From Lepidodermella squamata (lineage: Eukaryota > Animalia > Gastrotricha), in the NCBI GenBank assembly GCA_047495785.1, contig JBLDXI010000054.1, forward strand, positions 868,001-932,000: a stretch of DNA of 64,000 bases, in the 5' to 3' direction. Shown here one piece after another: positions 19,662 through 26,732 of the stretch. The position numbers were made by a program, and so were the translations under genes. Below the pieces are notes generated by a model. It had not been told where the DNA came from. It did no database searches and was given only the letters and a program-made list of their open reading frames with translations. The stretch's first letter is position 1, and each line of letters begins with the position of its first letter.

Positions 19662-20587
19662 TAAATTTATGTTTACGGAAATAATAAAAGGTTTCTGATT
19701 TGATCGGTATTGAGCTTTTTGAAGTTTTCTGAAGGGATATTTCATCAGAAGAACATTTTCTCTTGGAGTAAACCTATCAAACGTTGAAAGTGAAAGAAGG
19801 GTTTACCTTTCGCCAAGAATGGGCCCCAAAGCGTGCAAAAATGATCTTCAAGATGTATATTTAGGCTGATCACGTTTTAAATTATTTGAAGTCGTGAAGT
19901 CACAATGTTAGTTTGAGGATGAATCGAGACTGCTGAAAGAAAACATTCTGATGTGTTTTCCTCTGAAAAAGTATGTTGGTTAGGCAATCGAGGAGGTCAC
20001 CCCTCGCAATTTTAATGTGCTCCCGCTCAATCACTATAACAGTTTGATTAACTATCCAAATTAGATGTAACACGAAGATCAGCCAGACATGTTGGACTTT
20101 TTCCAGATAAGGAATCGTCAGGTTGTTTGCGGACGTACTCATTAAATATTATAGCGTCTGCGAATTTTCATTGCGCTGGTTATGATGACATTAGGGACGA
20201 GGTCGTTTCGAGCTCGTTATCAGAACTAATATACCTGTTTTGATTCGTGTTTTCAATTAAGCTACCCCGAAGAGTGCGCGAGCCGCAGTGGTATGTCGAG
20301 GAAGTAAGCGAAAATGCACCTATTTCGCTATCAACGCCATCCCACATTTTTCAAAGCGACGTCACTTCATTCTTTGAACTAGGTGTTTTTCTGTCTCCAT
20401 TCAGACAAAATTGTAATTTCCATCTGAGAAAAGTAGTTGATTTTCTTAATGTGTCTACAAGGACGCACGTGATCTTGCATACCTGTAGGCGGCGGATATT
20501 TCAGGATAACACCTGTTTTTTCGATTAGCTTTGATTATACAGATAACTGAATATTCCTACATACTGACAACTTCATTCAGACCGACG

Positions 20588-22924
20588 ATGGCTAAGATTC
20601 TACTATTAGCTTCTTTACTGGGACTTGCTGTGAACTCAGCTACCCCGAGTAAGCCTTTAACCGTCGAAATGCTGAACCTGGCTCCTTTCGCAGTGATAGA
20701 CCCTCGTCAAGCCCAGGCTGTGATGTTAGCCTCCCAGTTGGTTGTCGATCACGTGAATGTAAGAAGCGACATTCTGCCGAATTATCAACTCCAACTTACC
20801 TTTCGAGACGAAATGCTGGGAAATGCAGCTGCTCGCCGCATTATCGACTTCCGAAGAGAAATCGACGGTAATACTAGCTTCATTCAATCACCCATAGTCG
20901 TCGGCCCTGCGATTTCAACCGGCTGTAAAGCTATTGGGCCGATTTTGGGCTACGTTAATACCGTTGCAATGTCAACGCTATGCTCAGCTCCGTTCCTCGC
21001 TGAGCACAGCCGTTATCCCAATCTTTACCTTTCCATTGCTACTGGGAAGACAACAGCTTTAGCCATTCTTCGATTTATAAGGGAGGTTGGCCGTTGGTCT
21101 AGATTCGCGATCCTTTCCACATCATCTAACGCAAACGACTACGACACAGCTTTCTTCCTGCATGACCGAGCTGTAGCTCTGGGATTCACTGTACCTTGGT
21201 TCAACATGGTCACAGACATTGATTCCGAGGCAATAACATCACTCAAGGACAGTGGGTTGAGAATTATCGTGCTCAGCACTGGGGGCTTTGCTTTGTTCAG
21301 CAAATTCATGTGTGAGGCCTTCAAAGTTGGAATGACAGGACCAAGATACGTCTTCATAGCTATGACCGCAGCTTTTTCAATGGCTCCTTCACCAGGCTGC
21401 AGCATGAACGAAATGCGCTTGCAATGGGAGCAAACGTTCTACTTCGGCTATACGTCCAAACCGGAGAATTACTCAACGGTAACTGATTTGGGGTATACAG
21501 CAGCTGATTTTGAGGCTGAACTTATGAAAAGGATGAATGTGGCCACTACTGACTTGTTTTCAATGGCGTACACAGCACATGATACGGTTTTAAAGGCTGT
21601 GATGGCACTTCACAATACTGAGCTCGAACTCAAATGGCGGTACAATTTGACCCTAAGTGATTACAAGAGCGATCCAGAAAAAATTGCTAGAATCGCGAGT
21701 GAGTCATCACTCAATTCGAAGGTTGTAGGCGTTCGGGTTGGATTGATGTCCTATGCTTCTAATGGAAATTTGCAAGGGGATATCCAAGCGATTTCGCAAT
21801 GGACGCAGTTTGACGGGATGCAAAATTATGCATTGGTTAAACAACGGTCTGACGACTTTGCCTATGAAACATTCTCGCTTCAAATCCTGAGGCCATTCAA
21901 CTGGAAATCGGGTAAACTTCCTATTGACCAACCGAGGCTAGAAGTTGAGGAAAAACGGCTTCCCAACGGAATTTTCACGGCTGCAGTGGTTTTCGGAGGA
22001 GTTTTCTCATTTTGTCAACTCGCGGGGGTGATTTGGATTGGCGTTCACTGCAAGTATAGTTCCATCTTCTTTCCTTCCACAAAGATTGTTGGGTTACTCG
22101 GCAGTTTGATCCTGAACTCATCAGCAATTCTTTTTGCTATCGATAGGGTTGTGGATAACATAATTCCCTTCATTTCATCAATTGCAACTCTCTGTATTGG
22201 CGTATCACTCATCTTCAGCGCAGTTTCAATGCGTGTTTTGGTACTTGTTCGCGTTCTACGCTCATCGAACGTTAGACGAAGCGCAAGAATGAGCATTGCC
22301 CCGACTTACATCCATTCAACAAGACCGACCCATCCTAGAGAAAGCCTGAGAAGAGAATCAGGCCTGAGAAGGGATTCAGTAATGACATTCGAATCGAGGA
22401 GATCGATCAGTATCACGCGTGAATTATGGCAGCACATGGATAAAACAGCTGCTATCTCGACCATTCCCCTGGTTCTTGCTTCAGTTTTACTAGCGACCGT
22501 TTGGTTTGCTAGCCAGGACACCAATTGTCGATCGAGCATGTTAGGAAATCGTGTTTACTCGGAAGAGCTTGATATGATTAAGGAGACTCGAGTCGTTATA
22601 TGCTTCACCCCTAACATGACTGCATTCATGCTGGCAATAGGTTGCCTTCAACTGACAGTACTTGCAATAGGGGCTATCTCCGCTTACCAGATGAACCAGG
22701 TCAAAAAATTATGGAAAAATGTACCTGAATTCGCGATGACTTGTTTGGGGGTTGTAAATTCGTCGACGCTGTACGCGGCCGCTGTTCTTATCACTCTGGT
22801 TCTATCAAACAGTTTGATTGAACAACAGATGGCGATTCTTTTTTCGATATTAGTACTTTCGATTTCATCCTCCTTAACTTGGATTTCACCGGCGCTGCGG
22901 AAGTTCAACATTACTGAACCCTAA
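20588..22924 (+). CDS. Class C (GABA-B-like) orphan GPCR, subfamily A copy 1
   Basis: Signal peptide from ATG 20588; VNVRSDILPNYQL, VVGPAISTGC, WSRFAIL; 7TM with a very short C-tail. Intronless. Paralog of 60925-63237. Confidence 0.85.
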   Translation: MAKILLLASLLGLAVNSATPSKPLTVEMLNLAPFAVIDPRQAQAVMLASQLVVDHVNVRSDILPNYQLQLTFRDEMLGNAAARRIIDFRREIDGNTSFIQSPIVVGPAISTGCKAIGPILGYVNTVAMSTLCSAPFLAEHSRYPNLYLSIATGKTTALAILRFIREVGRWSRFAILSTSSNANDYDTAFFLHDRAVALGFTVPWFNMVTDIDSEAITSLKDSGLRIIVLSTGGFALFSKFMCEAFKVGMTGPRYVFIAMTAAFSMAPSPGCSMNEMRLQWEQTFYFGYTSKPENYSTVTDLGYTAADFEAELMKRMNVATTDLFSMAYTAHDTVLKAVMALHNTELELKWRYNLTLSDYKSDPEKIARIASESSLNSKVVGVRVGLMSYASNGNLQGDIQAISQWTQFDGMQNYALVKQRSDDFAYETFSLQILRPFNWKSGKLPIDQPRLEVEEKRLPNGIFTAAVVFGGVFSFCQLAGVIWIGVHCKYSSIFFPSTKIVGLLGSLILNSSAILFAIDRVVDNIIPFISSIATLCIGVSLIFSAVSMRVLVLVRVLRSSNVRRSARMSIAPTYIHSTRPTHPRESLRRESGLRRDSVMTFESRRSISITRELWQHMDKTAAISTIPLVLASVLLATVWFASQDTNCRSSMLGNRVYSEELDMIKETRVVICFTPNMTAFMLAIGCLQLTVLAIGAISAYQMNQVKKLWKNVPEFAMTCLGVVNSSTLYAAAVLITLVLSNSLIEQQMAILFSILVLSISSSLTWISPALRKFNITEP

Positions 22925-24293
22925 AGTACGGGTGAACCGCTGAATGTAAGATATTATCACATTCCATGTAATATTTTTTGAAATTTGACGTTGTACAGAG
23001 GTCATGTTCGTCCGTTTTATCGCCGGAAAAGCATTCCGGTGCATTTGTCCAAAAATAAACAAAAACTGTCCTTTCGGTTAGATAGGAAAAGCTTCCCGAA
23101 GATTCGAGATTTTTCGGGATTTACTATTTTCAAGACTATACAGTTAAATACTAGGGTGCTAATCGATTTCATTAACGTGCTTAAAAGGTTCCTGGATTCA
23201 GGACAGATCTTTTCCTCTCTCGAAACTCGAGCTATCGAGCAAAATCTGAATTATTTGCGGGCTGTGTCTCGTGTCTTGCAAGTTCGAAATTTCGGAGCAG
23301 TACGAAAAGCTTATCGAAAAAAGGTTGAATCAACAATTTTTATTCTCGAAATCACGGGTATACTTAGAGACGAAGGCTATGGCGCGCTTCCGATTTCCGT
23401 TTTCCCCTGTTCGAAACGTGCTTCTATATTCATTAGGTACAGAGAACAGACACGAATCTCGACTCTGTGAGATGTTCAAGCTGTCGCTGCTACTCTTACA
23501 AGAAGTTTTTTGTGAAACAGAATGGCTGAAATCCTACTTCGTGCATTGTTGAGTCTATCGAAAAACGATTCGATGAGAGTTGGCGTGATACACTGAAGAA
23601 CAGCGCTCATCAGCGCGCCGTTTATAATGCAGAGAACGGTCAACTTCCTAACCCAGGGTAACTCAACAGTCCACGAGCCGAGTGACCACATGGTTACTGA
23701 TAAGCATGAACAGAACCCTGGAATGTAGCTGATGACAAACATTATGAACAACGACAACGAAATTTTGACTAGATAAATCTCTTTACGCTGCCATTCTGCT
23801 AAGCCAGCTGCTGATCTTGCAGTGGAGTACAGGGATGTACCGTCATTTGGGGCAAAATGAACTTTTGGGGCTAATTGGCCAAAAATTGAGGTTTTCACAT
23901 TTTTATCGATAGCTCAAAAACTACAAGATAAAACTTCACAAAAATTTACGGGGACGATTATCAACAAGCCTTTTACAAGCCTGTAAATTTTCAGCCAGGT
24001 ATGTCCCGGAATGAGGTCACAGCATGTTGTTGTTTAAAGGTGAGTTTGGGGAGGTAAAAACGACTCCTCTAAATTGAATTACCTGGAGCCAATCACGAGG
24101 TTTGATGTTCAGATGAAATTTTTTCCTTCGACCATTTTCGTCGTAGATGACAGCAAAAAAAACCGCGACCCCAGGCGATGCACAGGTATGGCTAGGTGAT
24201 TGTGGCCAAATTACCCCATGGAAAACTCAATGATGGGGGCTAATTGGCCACCCTTATCCTTATAATGGGTTTTTAATATTTGATGATTGTGAG

Positions 24294-24386
24294 GGTTGAA
24301 TGGTCGAGTGGTTGTGATGCGTCATCAGAGCTTGCGAGTGATCTGATGAGCGACGGTTCGAATCCTCATAAAGTAGCATTTTTTTT
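24294..24386 (+). ncRNA. tRNA-like Pol III cassette (SINE-head-like) in the left MITE arm
   Basis: A box TGGTCGAGTGG (24301-24311), B box GGTTCGAATCC (24355-24365), hairpin TCATCAGA/TCTGATGA between them, T8 run 24379-24386. No acceptor stem, so not a functional tRNA. Confidence 0.55.
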
Positions 24387-24592
24387 GCTACGCATTTAAT
24401 TTTTTAATTTTTTCTGTTAATTTTCCATTTTAATTATTCTACTAACACCACGTATCCCAGGCATTTCTTTTGTTCGGGAGGCGTTTAAAAGTTGCTCAGC
24501 AGTAAAACTATCAGAAAAAACGGAGAAACTAATTAAAAATTATTAGTAAAATGGACAATTGAAACCAAAAAATTAAAAATTAAATGCGTAGC

Positions 24593-24683
24593 AAAAAAAA
24601 TGCTACTTTATGAGGATTCGAACCGTCGCTCATCAGATCACTCAAGTTCTGATGACGCATCACAACCACTCGACCATTCAACC
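24593..24683 (-). ncRNA. Mirror-image tRNA-like Pol III cassette in the right MITE arm
   Basis: On the minus strand: A box 24666-24676, B box 24614-24624, T8 run 24593-24600. Confidence 0.55.
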
Positions 24684-26732
24684 CTCACAATCATCAAATA
24701 TTAAAAACCCATTATAAGGATAAGGGTGGCCAATTAGCCCCAAAACACCTGTCCAATTTGCCCCAAACCTGGGGCAAAATGAGCTTCCTATAAAATCGGA
24801 ATCAGGACCCTCTGAAACGTGTAAAAATGCGAAAAAAACAGGGGGTCATTTTTTTCCCGCGGCCATTTTGCCCCAATTTACGGTAGTGGTCCCTTGAGCG
24901 GTATAGCCGACTCGAGATTTCTTCAAACGGTCTATGGTTTTGAAAATCTTCCAATAGTTCATCCCCAGGTAGCTTGCAGAACTTGAGAATAGGGTGAAGT
25001 AAAACAGGACGTTGAAAAAGGTGGTGTCAAAGTCTCCTATGAGGCTGTAGTCGAAATCCCCGCAGATCAGAACAGGTTCAGTTGAGTTTCGTTCCTCAAT
25101 TATAAGCAATTTAGCTGAAAACGTATGGTATGGCCACCACGAAAATACAGCACTGTAAAGCATACTCAAACAGAGCAGAAGGAAAGTTACACCCAGTATC
25201 TAAGAGGAAGACAAAGGATAAGGTAAGCTGGAAAAAATTAATGAAATTTCACCTTGAAGCTGTTTGGCTTATAGTTAATCTTGTTGGATGAGATGCAGAG
25301 ACGTCTTTCGTATGAAATCGAAGCTTCAATAAGCAAACCAAACCCACCCGAGCCCCAAACCAGCCAAAGGGACATCGAACAGGCCATAGGGGAAGCTTCC
25401 CACCAGCCTGTTCTTAGGGTGACTAATAGCCCATAGCTATACGAACATGCGAAGATAATATCGCGAATGTGAAGACAGCATGTGAGAATGAGGAAGTCGC
25501 GTTTCACCCGACGTTGAATATACACGATAACGTTAGCGATTGAGGCGATGATTGTGAGGCTAGTGATGATAACGCTTGCAGCAGCCCATCCTATTCGATC
25601 ATCGATGGTTTTTGAAGCGACGTCATGGTAAAAAGAAACAAAGTACGGCTTTGATCGGCCGTAGCCTCGATCAGGCAAATCGACATCGATCCAACCGCCA
25701 TTGAGCACTCGAGCTATCGGATAGCTTGAGTTTGTTGTATTGTTCATTATGTGTTGATAATAGTTCAAAAAGCAGATTCGCCGTAAACTGTAAAAGATGA
25801 CACGGTTAGTGATTGCAGCTACGGCGGAAACTTCTATCGTGTTTCAAACATCTGATATATGCGTGCCTCTAGCATCATCTCCCTTTTCTCCTACCCATCG
25901 AGCAGTATAAAATGGGGAATTGTCATGGGAACGAAATCTAAATTGGGAATCTTACAATCCCTCGATAGCAAATGCAAATGCAGTAATCCCTCGATTCTGT
26001 GCATTTTAAATCGATCTATTTCAAAAAGGGAAATACAAACTAATTTTTTCTAAGCAGATGATCGGTGCCACCTTCTTAATTTGTGAGGCCTCCAGTTTTT
26101 TCATCTTTTGGCAATCACCTTTCTGATATTTCCGAACGAGCCTGGGTGGTAGCGTCGAGTTCCAATGATTCAGGTTGCGATCTTGGATCTCGGAGCTGCG
26201 AGGGATGGACAACATATTTTTGCTGTATTTGGCAAAATGACCAGTCAAGATGACAAGAAAAACTAAGAAAGCAAACTTAGAATCTTTGAGTGAACAAGAG
26301 CTAATAATTATGAATCACTATGAATGCACTTTTTGCGAAGTGATGATTCATAATTTTTGCAAAAAGATCACTAAGATCTAAGACTCAATTCCCTTCAAGT
26401 CTCAAGTCAACATACTTTTTGCCGTTTTGTGGAAAACACAAAAAATTAGCTAAAGCTCTCCTTTTACTTGATAAAGGTCATAAATTTAATAGGACGTGAA
26501 CAAATTTGTTACTAAACTTTATTTCGAGAAATAAATGCTGCAACCGGGTTGGGAGAAATTTATACTTGGATAAATGATCATGTTCTTTGGTCTACTGAAT
26601 GCCGTTAAAGAAAGCAACGTTTCTGTTAGAGTTTAAAAGTTTAAATGATTCACAAGAAGGCTAACAAGAAGGAAGAATTAACGTATTTGTCAGTAAACGT
26701 TTGAGTAAATTGCGGCTGCCTGGATCAAGCGT

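What the first reader, a model, noticed from the sequence alone, without database searches (positions are those of the whole stretch)
24236..24741. DNA-transposon MITE carrying two convergent, complete Pol III transcription cassettes
Seen: each arm of the ~175-bp internal palindrome has TTATAAT about 30 bp upstream, a consensus A box (TGGTCGAGTGG), an 8-bp hairpin in place of the anticodon arm, a perfect B box (GGTTCGAATCC) and a T8 run that also lies in a GTAGCA/TGCTAC hairpin. The arms differ by only a few changes, including a 2-bp indel in the hairpin loop. Established: A box + B box + T run is a type-2 Pol III unit, and TFIIIC sites can act as chromatin barriers. Inference: a cut-and-paste element captured and mirrored a tRNA-derived SINE head, and now spreads a ~90-nt RNA gene pair or insulator. 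Read-through from the host GPCR promoter would also give a long dsRNA hairpin.
Basis: partly seen in the sequence, partly recalled or inferred. Interest (0 to 1): 0.75.

Follow-up and report, generated by a model that had tools for sequence, protein, structure and literature searches.

The report
Pogo transposon carrying tRNA-like modules
This is a young 1-kb cut-and-paste (pogo-type) jumping element that has landed in a receptor gene; like its enzyme-coding parent and sister families it carries worn-out serine-tRNA genes whose promoter and stop signals alone have stayed intact, so the transposon lineage probably uses them.

Summary
Window 24236-24741 is a 506-bp palindrome, and each arm carries an A box, a B box, correct spacing and a T8 run.

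The boundaries are wrong. All 26 full copies share conserved flanks. The mobile unit is window 23838-24885 (1048 bp), with TA duplications and 20-bp inverted ends, at roughly 35-50 copies. Two copies are identical.

It is a non-autonomous derivative of a pogo (DDE_1) transposon with one intact copy in the genome. That parent carries one such unit about 200 bp from its 3' end, pointing inward. So do a sister autonomous element (52% amino-acid identity) and two further short families.

Five unit versions share serine-tRNA gene geometry. Their boxes match the genome's own tRNA-Ser at 20-22 of 22 positions, but only 37-41% elsewhere. Within the older sister family, nearly all box changes fall on degenerate consensus positions. 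This points to selection for TFIIIC/Pol III binding.

No free-standing SINE copy was found, and no tRNA finder accepts the units. Transcription and function are untested.

The parts
23838..24885 (+). Whole non-autonomous pogo-type element (1048 bp including a TA at each end)
   Evidence: Homology among 26 copies starts and stops here, and the flanks differ between copies.
23838..23839 (.). TA, left copy of the target-site duplication
   Evidence: TA is present at both ends of every complete copy, next to unrelated flanks.
24884..24885 (.). TA, right copy of the target-site duplication
23840..23859 (+). Left terminal inverted repeat (CCGTCATTTGGGGCAAAATG)
   Evidence: (I5), 10 and 18: 103 genomic matches against 0 for the reversed control.
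24864..24883 (-). Right terminal inverted repeat (CCGTAAATTGGGGCAAAATG on the minus strand)
23863..23881 (+). Subterminal motif TTTTGGGGCTAATTGGCCA, a likely transposase-binding repeat. The same motif marks both outer ends of the palindrome.
   Evidence: I6, 100% complementary to 24727-24745. The same inverted pair is present in the autonomous element.
24236..24437 (+). Left arm of the internal palindrome, an inverted copy of the right subterminal region
24438..24541 (.). Loop of the palindrome. It is the most variable part and is inverted in three copies.
24542..24741 (-). Right arm of the palindrome. Window 24659-24885, which overlaps its outer part, is 97.8% identical to the 3' end of the autonomous element.
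24260..24266 (+). TATA-like TTATAAT, 34 nt before the left A box
24301..24311 (+). A box of the left unit (TGGTCGAGTGG)
24322..24349 (+). 8-bp hairpin where a tRNA would have its anticodon and variable arms
24355..24365 (+). B box of the left unit (GGTTCGAATCC)
24379..24386 (+). T8 Pol III terminator of the left unit, in the loop of a 6-bp hairpin
24666..24676 (-). A box of the right unit
24614..24624 (-). B box of the right unit
24593..24600 (-). T8 terminator of the right unit
24711..24717 (-). TATA-like TTATAAT of the right unit
24886..25169 (-). Upstream half of the interrupted host coding exon (rhodopsin-type receptor-like gene)
   Evidence: The neighbouring N-terminal exon scores 0.95 to 7tm_1 clusters.
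23476..23837 (-). Downstream half of the interrupted host exon
   Evidence: Removing the element and one TA gives one 225-codon open frame across the site.

Best explanation
Shown. Window 23838-24885 is a very recent insertion of a 1048-bp non-autonomous pogo-type (Tc1/mariner/pogo superfamily) DNA transposon into a coding exon of a receptor gene. Its ends match a single intact 4420-bp autonomous element elsewhere in the genome, which encodes a 633-aa DDE_1 transposase. That parent, a sister autonomous element and at least two other short families each carry, about 200 bp inside the 3' end and pointing inward, a degenerate gene derived from a serine tRNA. In these units only the internal Pol III promoter (A box and B box at tRNA-Ser spacing) and the T-run terminator are kept. 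In this family the 3' subterminal segment, unit included, was duplicated in inverted orientation, which gives the 506-bp palindrome with two convergent units.

Inferred. The boxes are held by selection acting on the transposon lineage because they bind TFIIIC/Pol III.

Guess. The most likely benefit is a nucleosome-free, silencing-resistant patch next to the transposase-binding repeats, which keeps the element's end accessible. A short (~85-95 nt) Pol III RNA is probably made as well.
For: Boundaries, TA duplication and inverted ends.

Autonomous partner: 633-aa ORF with Pfam DDE_1 (E = 1.6e-17); ends 84% (left 408 nt) and 97.8% (right 227 nt) identical to this element.

The unit occupies the same subterminal position in the C15 parent and the C3 sister, which share 52% amino-acid identity. 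It is also present in family 2 (at least 29 units) and family 3.

Geometry equals class II tRNA-Ser: A box at position 8, 43-45 nt to the B box, T-run 11-14 nt after the B box.

Box identity to the genome's own tRNA-Ser is 20-22 of 22, against 37-41% elsewhere (Fisher p = 1e-7 to 3e-5). Between units it is 19-22 of 22 against 21-51%.

Beyond the terminal ~145 nt, the boxes are the only exact collinear 11-mers shared between lineages.

Family-2 copies were retrieved without reference to the box in question:
- The A box fits the consensus in 27 of 28 copies.
- B-box changes are T9>C (5 copies, an N position), G6>A (2 copies, an R position) and only 2 singletons at conserved positions.
- The 32-nt body varies at about 18 columns.

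In this family the one recurrent B-box change (A8>T in L024 and L025, mirrored in both arms) is also at an N position.

The family is active now: two copies are 100% identical and 13 are at least 97% identical.
Against: - There is no expression, Pol III or TFIIIC occupancy data; none could be obtained here.
- Within this family the boxes are no quieter than the body between them (8 events over 60 sites against 10 over 84). The copies are too young to tell.
- The alignments used for box statistics are anchored by the boxes themselves, and family 2 was first found by a box pattern.
- Each short family's unit body differs from that of its extant autonomous partner, with homology breaking at or near the unit. 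The units may therefore be swapped by recombination rather than descend vertically.
- The third autonomous relative (C4, a decayed copy) has no unit.
- None of 80 related pogo loci from metagenomes has one.
- The genome is packed with tRNA genes, so capture is easy.
Confidence: 0.6

Rival explanations
1. Neutral passenger. A tRNA-Ser gene or pseudogene was picked up once by the ancestral pogo element and is simply decaying. The boxes look conserved only because they are the part one searches and aligns by.
For: ARAGORN and Rfam reject every unit as a tRNA. The genome holds hundreds of tRNA-Ser genes. The C4 relative lacks the unit. Within-family data for this element show no box-specific quiet.
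Against: The two autonomous units were found by position, not by box search. They keep 19 of 22 box positions while the rest is at 27%, which is chance level. Family-2 copies down to 77-86% overall identity mostly keep both boxes exact, and the substitutions concentrate on the degenerate N/R positions of the Pol III consensus. The T-run is kept in all five versions at the right distance.
Confidence: 0.15
2. Repeated gene conversion or template switching with the very abundant genomic tRNA-Ser genes, or with units of other transposons, keeps refreshing the boxes without any selection for function.
For: Homology between each short family and its autonomous partner breaks exactly at or near the unit. 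The MITE1/parent break lies right after the A box, as expected for recombination through shared boxes. tRNA-Ser genes are present in hundreds of copies.
Against: Conversion from real tRNA-Ser genes would also restore the stems and anticodon arm, yet non-box identity to tRNA-Ser is only 37-41%. The five bodies differ from one another and from every tRNA. The body of this family's unit occurs nowhere outside the family, and the parent's unit occurs nowhere else at all.
Confidence: 0.08
3. The relevant feature is the long palindrome, not the Pol III units. Read-through transcripts fold into a ~200-bp hairpin that is diced into small RNAs against the parent transposon, as with the maize Mu killer locus (recalled from memory).
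For: A near-perfect 200-bp hairpin, -332.8 kcal/mol. The arm's outer ~80 nt, through the A box, match the autonomous element's 3' end within a 97.8%-identical stretch. This copy lies inside a transcribed-looking gene.
Against: The hairpin covers only non-coding subterminal DNA, not the transposase gene. It does not explain why single-unit families and the autonomous elements keep the boxes. Each arm's T8 would stop Pol III transcription. Palindromic copies are also the most recently amplified ones, so silencing of the family is not evident.
Confidence: 0.1
4. One reading: a MITE captured the head of a tRNA-derived SINE and mirrored it.
For: The units have a SINE-head-like layout.
Against: No free-standing copy of the unit turned up; every scored hit lies inside a copy of this element. 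The unit is present at the same place in the autonomous pogo elements. No LINE-type tail and no variable-length duplications were seen.
Confidence: 0.03

Closest known systems
pogo/Tigger-type DNA transposons and their short non-autonomous derivatives (MITE-like elements)
   Same: TA target duplication, short inverted ends with repeated subterminal motifs, and an autonomous partner with HTH_psq plus DDE_1 transposase. Only the ends are shared between the short and long forms.
   Different: It carries a conserved Pol III-type module next to the 3' subterminal repeats. No such module was seen in 80 related pogo loci from other sources or in the papers I could search. At 1048 bp it is larger than a classic MITE.
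tRNA-derived SINE heads (type-2 Pol III units)
   Same: A box, B box, tRNA-like spacing and T-run, with a degenerate tRNA body.
   Different: It moves as DNA between pogo ends with TA duplications. There is no LINE-derived tail and no free-standing copy.
tDNA / TFIIIC-site (ETC) and B2-SINE chromatin barriers (established knowledge, recalled from memory, not tested here)
   Same: This is the proposed working principle: B-box-bound TFIIIC keeps a nucleosome-free patch and blocks the spread of silencing.
   Different: Here the site would serve the transposon rather than the host. No chromatin data exist.
Harbinger-type elements with paired tRNA-like units in the same genome (earlier scan note s1-391777), and TIR elements carrying tRNA clusters (s1-404896, s1-393986, s1-373988, s1-384333)
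   Same: Same genome; DNA transposons carrying tRNA-type units. For the Harbinger family, box and terminator conservation across related families was reported.
   Different: Different superfamily (pogo, TA duplication). The units point inward, and the autonomous parent has a single unit at the 3' end only. I did not re-examine those loci.
Dada DNA transposons, which insert into tRNA and snRNA genes (recalled from memory)
   Same: A DNA transposon lineage tied to small Pol III/snRNA genes.
   Different: Those elements target such genes. Here no tRNA gene lies within 1.5-3 kb of any of 36 insertions; the element carries the unit instead.

Membership tests
Tc1/mariner/pogo superfamily, non-autonomous element | TA target-site duplication | tested here: met
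   TA at both ends of all complete copies, with unrelated flanks.
Tc1/mariner/pogo superfamily, non-autonomous element | Terminal inverted repeats shared with an autonomous element that encodes a pogo (DDE_1) transposase | tested here: met
   L034:201-4620 has the same ends and a 633-aa ORF with PF03184 (E = 1.6e-17). Homologues carry HTH_psq plus DDE_1.
Tc1/mariner/pogo superfamily, non-autonomous element | No transposase of its own; many dispersed copies | tested here: met
   The element holds no transposase-sized ORF; ORFs overlapping 23838-24885 only run in from the host exon. There are 26 full copies plus fragments, and 103 end matches.
MITE in the strict sense | Size below roughly 800 bp | tested here: not met
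   The element is 1048 bp. The 506-bp palindrome never occurs without the outer parts.
Type-2 Pol III gene (tRNA-type promoter) | A box TRGCNNAGTGG | tested here: met
   TGGTCGAGTGG, 10 of 11 (T at the C position); perfect in the C3 and family-3 versions.
Type-2 Pol III gene (tRNA-type promoter) | B box GGTTCGANNCC, 30-60 nt after the A box | tested here: met
   GGTTCGAATCC, 43 nt (left arm) and 41 nt (right arm) after the A box.
Type-2 Pol III gene (tRNA-type promoter) | Run of at least 4 T as terminator shortly after the B box | tested here: met
   T8 starting 13 nt after the B box in both arms.
Type-2 Pol III gene (tRNA-type promoter) | Transcription by Pol III / TFIIIC occupancy | not testable with these tools
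tRNA gene | Cloverleaf recognised by tRNA finders | tested here: not met
   ARAGORN finds none. Rfam gives no tRNA hit even at E up to 10. The acceptor and T stems do not pair.
SINE | Free-standing retroposed copies without transposon ends | tested here: not met
   All scored hits of the 101-nt unit lie within copies of this element. Only 40 of 95 candidates were scored.

The most novel reading that the evidence does not exclude
In this animal, cut-and-paste transposons of unrelated superfamilies (pogo here; Harbinger and others in earlier scan notes) have each taken up a stripped-down tRNA gene and keep only its TFIIIC/Pol III-binding parts. This would be a portable anti-silencing or accessibility module that the element needs in order to keep moving. 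It would be a new class of cis-acting accessory for DNA transposons.
Probability: 0.3. Interest if true: 0.85.

Novelty: new variant of a known kind. Interest (0 to 1): 0.62.

Why it matters
DNA transposons are thought to need only their ends and a transposase. Here a lineage has kept a Pol III promoter-plus-terminator module through a divergence that left its transposases about 52% identical, and through several rounds of short-element formation. That suggests TFIIIC/Pol III binding helps a cut-and-paste element persist, for example by resisting silencing.

It would also give a natural, compact and mobile "barrier" element, and a directly testable system: an active family, one intact parent, and box variants already present in nature.

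The window copy is in addition a clean example of a fresh gene-breaking insertion.

Tried and rejected
- tRNA and Rfam searches on all unit versions gave no tRNA call. The only Rfam hits were weak plant-miRNA and sRNA matches typical of AT-rich hairpins.
- A search for free-standing SINE copies found none.
- The idea that insertions home to tRNA genes was rejected: there are no tRNA genes within 1.5-3 kb of 36 copies.
- Looking for the module in related pogo elements elsewhere: 80 metagenome loci (291 kb) have none, though many of those contigs are short.
Box statistics for those families therefore rest on the sequences printed by pattern searches, counted by eye.
- Five literature searches for a pogo or MITE element with a tRNA-like Pol III module returned nothing relevant.
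- The within-family conservation test for this element lacked power and showed no box-specific effect.
- The branching order of the three autonomous lineages is unresolved, so whether the C4 copy lost the unit or never had it cannot be decided.
- The host exon read across the excised site was only checked for an open frame in a script. I did not send it to any search because it has no reference.
Full report
**1. The observation**

The sequence at window 24236-24741 is as described. A repeat search gives two arm segments, 24236-24334/24643-24741 (99% complementary) and 24336-24437/24542-24643 (91%), around a 104-nt loop. As RNA the 506 nt fold into one hairpin of -332.8 kcal/mol, z = -43.

- **Left arm (+ strand):** TTATAAT (24260-24266), A box TGGTCGAGTGG (24301-24311), an 8-bp stem (24322-24329/24342-24349), B box GGTTCGAATCC (24355-24365), and T8 (24379-24386) in the loop of a GTAGCA/TGCTAC hairpin.
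- **Right arm (- strand):** the mirror image, differing by a 2-bp indel and one base in the hairpin loop.

An A-box-core/B-box pattern occurs twice in the 64-kb window against 0.00 expected from shuffles. These are the only two B-box matches in the window, and both have an A box and a T-run.

**2. The boundaries are wrong**

A search of the window's own 121-Mb assembly found 26 full-length copies of the palindrome at 89-100% identity. In every one the DNA on both sides is also conserved.

Homology among copies ends only at window 23838 and 24885, beyond which the flanks are unrelated. The element is therefore 1048 bp. It has 20-bp imperfect inverted ends (CCGTCATTTGGGGCAAAATG / CCGTAAATTGGGGCAAAATG) and a TA on each side, the target duplication of the Tc1/mariner/pogo superfamily.

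The end sequence occurs 103 times in the genome, with 0 matches for the reversed control. That means roughly 35-50 elements including fragments. Two copies (this one and one on contig C24) are 100% identical over all 1048 bp, and 13 are at least 97% identical. The family has moved very recently.

**3. The parent**

Pairs of ends at unusual distances led to one 4420-bp element (L034:201-4620). It has an intact 633-aa ORF that matches Pfam DDE_1 (E = 1.6e-17). Its homologues elsewhere carry HTH_psq plus DDE_1, the pogo type, but are at most 45% identical.

The short element shares its left 408 nt (84% identity) and right 227 nt (97.8%) with this parent. The parent is single-copy.

About 200 bp from its 3' end the parent carries one unit of the same kind, pointing inward and convergent with the transposase gene. 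It reads A box TGGTCGAGTGG, 45 nt, B box GGTTCGAGTCC, 13 nt, T8.

The palindrome of the short element is thus an inverted duplication of the parent-type 3' subterminal segment. Its outer ends coincide with a repeated motif (GGGGCTAATTGGCC). That motif also occurs near both ends of the parent and is probably a transposase-binding repeat.

**4. The module is a lineage trait**

- **Sister autonomous element on C3** (622-aa ORF, 52% identical). At the same position it has A box TGGCCGAGTGG, 43 nt of unrelated sequence, B box GGTTCAAATCC and T7.
- **Family 2.** A ~945-bp short family with TA duplications, built on the C3-type ends, carries one unit. It has a tRNA-Ser(AGA)-like anticodon loop (CTAGAAA), A box TGGTCGAGTGG, B box GGTTCGAGTCC and T7, in at least 29 copies.
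- **Family 3.** A third short family with C3-type subterminal motifs has A box TGGCCGAGTGG, 44 nt of yet another body, B box GGTTCGATTCC and a T-run.
- **Third autonomous relative on C4.** This copy is decayed, with a stop in the transposase, and has no unit.

The three autonomous lineages form one clade (100/100 support) on a long branch apart from 14 outside pogo proteins. Their internal order is unresolved. None of 80 related pogo loci from metagenomes (291 kb) carries an A+B+T unit.

**5. Origin from tRNA-Ser and selective retention of the boxes**

Aligned with the genome's own tRNA-Ser(AGA), (CGA) and (GCU) genes, all units share the class II tRNA layout. The A box starts at position 8, the B box at position 61, and the T-run falls where a tRNA gene's terminator sits.

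| Comparison | Box positions | Elsewhere | Fisher p |
|---|---|---|---|
| Units vs the genome's tRNA-Ser | 20-22 of 22 | 37-41% | 1e-7 to 3e-5 |
| Units vs each other | 19-22 of 22 | 21-51% | not given |

Between lineages, the only exact collinear 11-mers beyond the terminal ~145 nt are the boxes.

The acceptor and T stems no longer pair, and neither ARAGORN nor Rfam calls any unit a tRNA.

*Caveat.* The boxes anchor these alignments, and family 2 was first found by a box pattern. The two autonomous units, however, were found by position.

**6.

*This family.* The copies are too young. Variable sites number 7 of 60 in the A box, B box and T-run against 96 of 342 elsewhere in the arms (p = 0.006). 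But the body between the boxes is equally quiet, with 10 events over 84 sites. The one recurrent B-box change (A8>T in L024 and L025, mirrored in both arms) is at an N position of the consensus.

*Family 2* (copies 77-100% identical). I retrieved units by anchors outside the box being tested.
- **A box** (retrieved via the subterminal motif). It fits the consensus in 27 of 28 copies. The changes are G6>A at an N position, T4>C toward the consensus, and one T1>C. The 49 nt just upstream vary at 12 or more columns.
- **B box** (retrieved via a body anchor plus T6). Changes are T9>C in five copies (N position), G6>A in two (R position), and only two singletons at conserved positions. The 32-nt body varies at about 18 columns and the 14 nt after the B box at 8 or more.

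These counts were made by eye from printed matches, because no more genome DNA could be fetched. Substitutions confined to the degenerate positions of the Pol III consensus are what selection for TFIIIC binding predicts.

**7. A complication**

Each short family's unit body differs from that of its extant autonomous partner.
- This element is 98% identical to its parent for 221 nt from the end, up to and including the A box. Identity then drops to about 45%, with the B box and T8 kept.
- Family 2 is 97.6% identical to the C3 element for 169 nt and breaks about 25 nt before the A box.

The units therefore behave as exchangeable modules. Either the direct parents are lost, or recombination between units occurs through the shared boxes. 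This weakens a strict "vertical conservation" argument. It does not explain why only promoter and terminator survive in every version.

**8. What it is not**

- **Not a SINE capture.** All scored hits of the 101-nt unit lie inside copies of this element.
- **Not tRNA-targeted.** No tRNA gene lies within 1.5-3 kb of 36 insertions of families 1 and 2.

**9. Context of the window copy**

The element lies in a minus-strand gene. Removing it together with one TA joins ORFs 25169-24886 and 23837-23476 into one 225-codon open frame. The upstream exon (25768-25238) resembles rhodopsin-type receptors by language-model features (0.95), although Pfam gave no hit. This is a fresh, gene-breaking exon insertion. 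The joined frame was only inspected in a script and was not searched further, since it has no reference.

**10. Mechanism**

- **Shown:** the structure, the family relations, and the retention of the boxes.
- **Inferred:** the boxes bind TFIIIC/Pol III, and this benefits the transposon.
- **Best guess** (about 0.3 on its own): a TFIIIC-bound, nucleosome-free patch beside the transposase-binding repeats keeps the end accessible and resists silencing. This rests on the established barrier activity of tDNAs, ETC sites and B2 SINEs, recalled from memory.

The hairpin/small-RNA reading is possible for palindromic copies but cannot explain the single-unit families.

**11. Comparison and novelty**

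The element is a member of the pogo group (features tested: TA duplication, shared ends, DDE_1 parent). It is larger than a strict MITE. It has a type-2 Pol III gene layout but is neither a tRNA gene nor a SINE.

Literature searches found no pogo or MITE with such a module; absence in that library is not proof.

Earlier notes of this scan (unchecked by me) report Harbinger elements with outward-pointing tRNA-like units whose boxes are conserved (s1-391777). They also report several TIR elements loaded with tRNA genes in the same genome, probably the gastrotrich Lepidodermella squamata (s1-393973). The present case adds a second superfamily, a parent/derivative series, and unbiased box statistics.

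**12. Limits**

Noticed in passing
window 23476-25169 (minus strand): The element interrupts a coding exon of a rhodopsin-type receptor-like gene. Excising it with one TA restores a 225-codon frame. An identical copy lies on contig C24, so the insertion is very recent and may still be polymorphic.
   Followed up: partly
L014, L016, L018 (G000:C15:4893600-4894641, C13:2120136-2121177, C28:1200105-1201146): In three copies the central loop of the palindrome is inverted relative to the outer parts, as expected from flip recombination between the arms.
   Followed up: partly
L028 (C13:3061309-3062190), L029 (C48:451677-452560), L037 (C26:938469-938973), L036 (C74:1182876-1183272): Shorter derivatives exist: two copies have lost the loop and are near-perfect hairpins, one 505-bp copy has a single arm and unit, and one copy is 397 bp.
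   Followed up: partly
L043 (G000:C21:2613924-2615146): A partial family-2 copy (first 283 nt) lies head to head with a full inverted copy. This gives a second, independent pair of convergent tRNA-like units, and may show how such palindromes start.
   Followed up: no
L033 (C13:1590118-1594023) and L027 (C74:1116316-1119179): Two copies of the element carry nested insertions in the loop. One has a 796-aa reverse-transcriptase ORF (Pfam RVT_1). The other is a 1.8-kb insert with two 158-aa ORFs of unknown kind.
   Followed up: no
G000:C3:1420841-1421001, C7:1620810-1620970, C105:84939-85090, C78:25548-25697, C13:780379-780554: A third short family with C3-type subterminal motifs and its own tRNA-like unit (perfect A and B boxes). 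The C13 copy has lost the A box by deletion.
   Followed up: partly
L133 (G000:C1:4720000-4727000); arrays on C1 4.72-5.18 Mb, C9 5.41-5.65 Mb, C10 2.37-2.73 Mb: There are 15 different tRNA genes in 7 kb, and tRNA-Ser genes recur every 3.5-6 kb over hundreds of kb. These are the tandem multi-tRNA arrays already noted elsewhere in this scan.
   Followed up: no
window 20531-22924 (+): An intronless 797-aa ORF with an ANF_receptor ligand-binding domain followed by transmembrane-rich sequence (class C receptor-like), just upstream of the interrupted gene.
   Followed up: no
family-2 units listed: The first pair of the anticodon-like stem occurs as G.T, G-C or A-T but never A.C. This is a weak hint that the RNA fold matters.
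   Followed up: no
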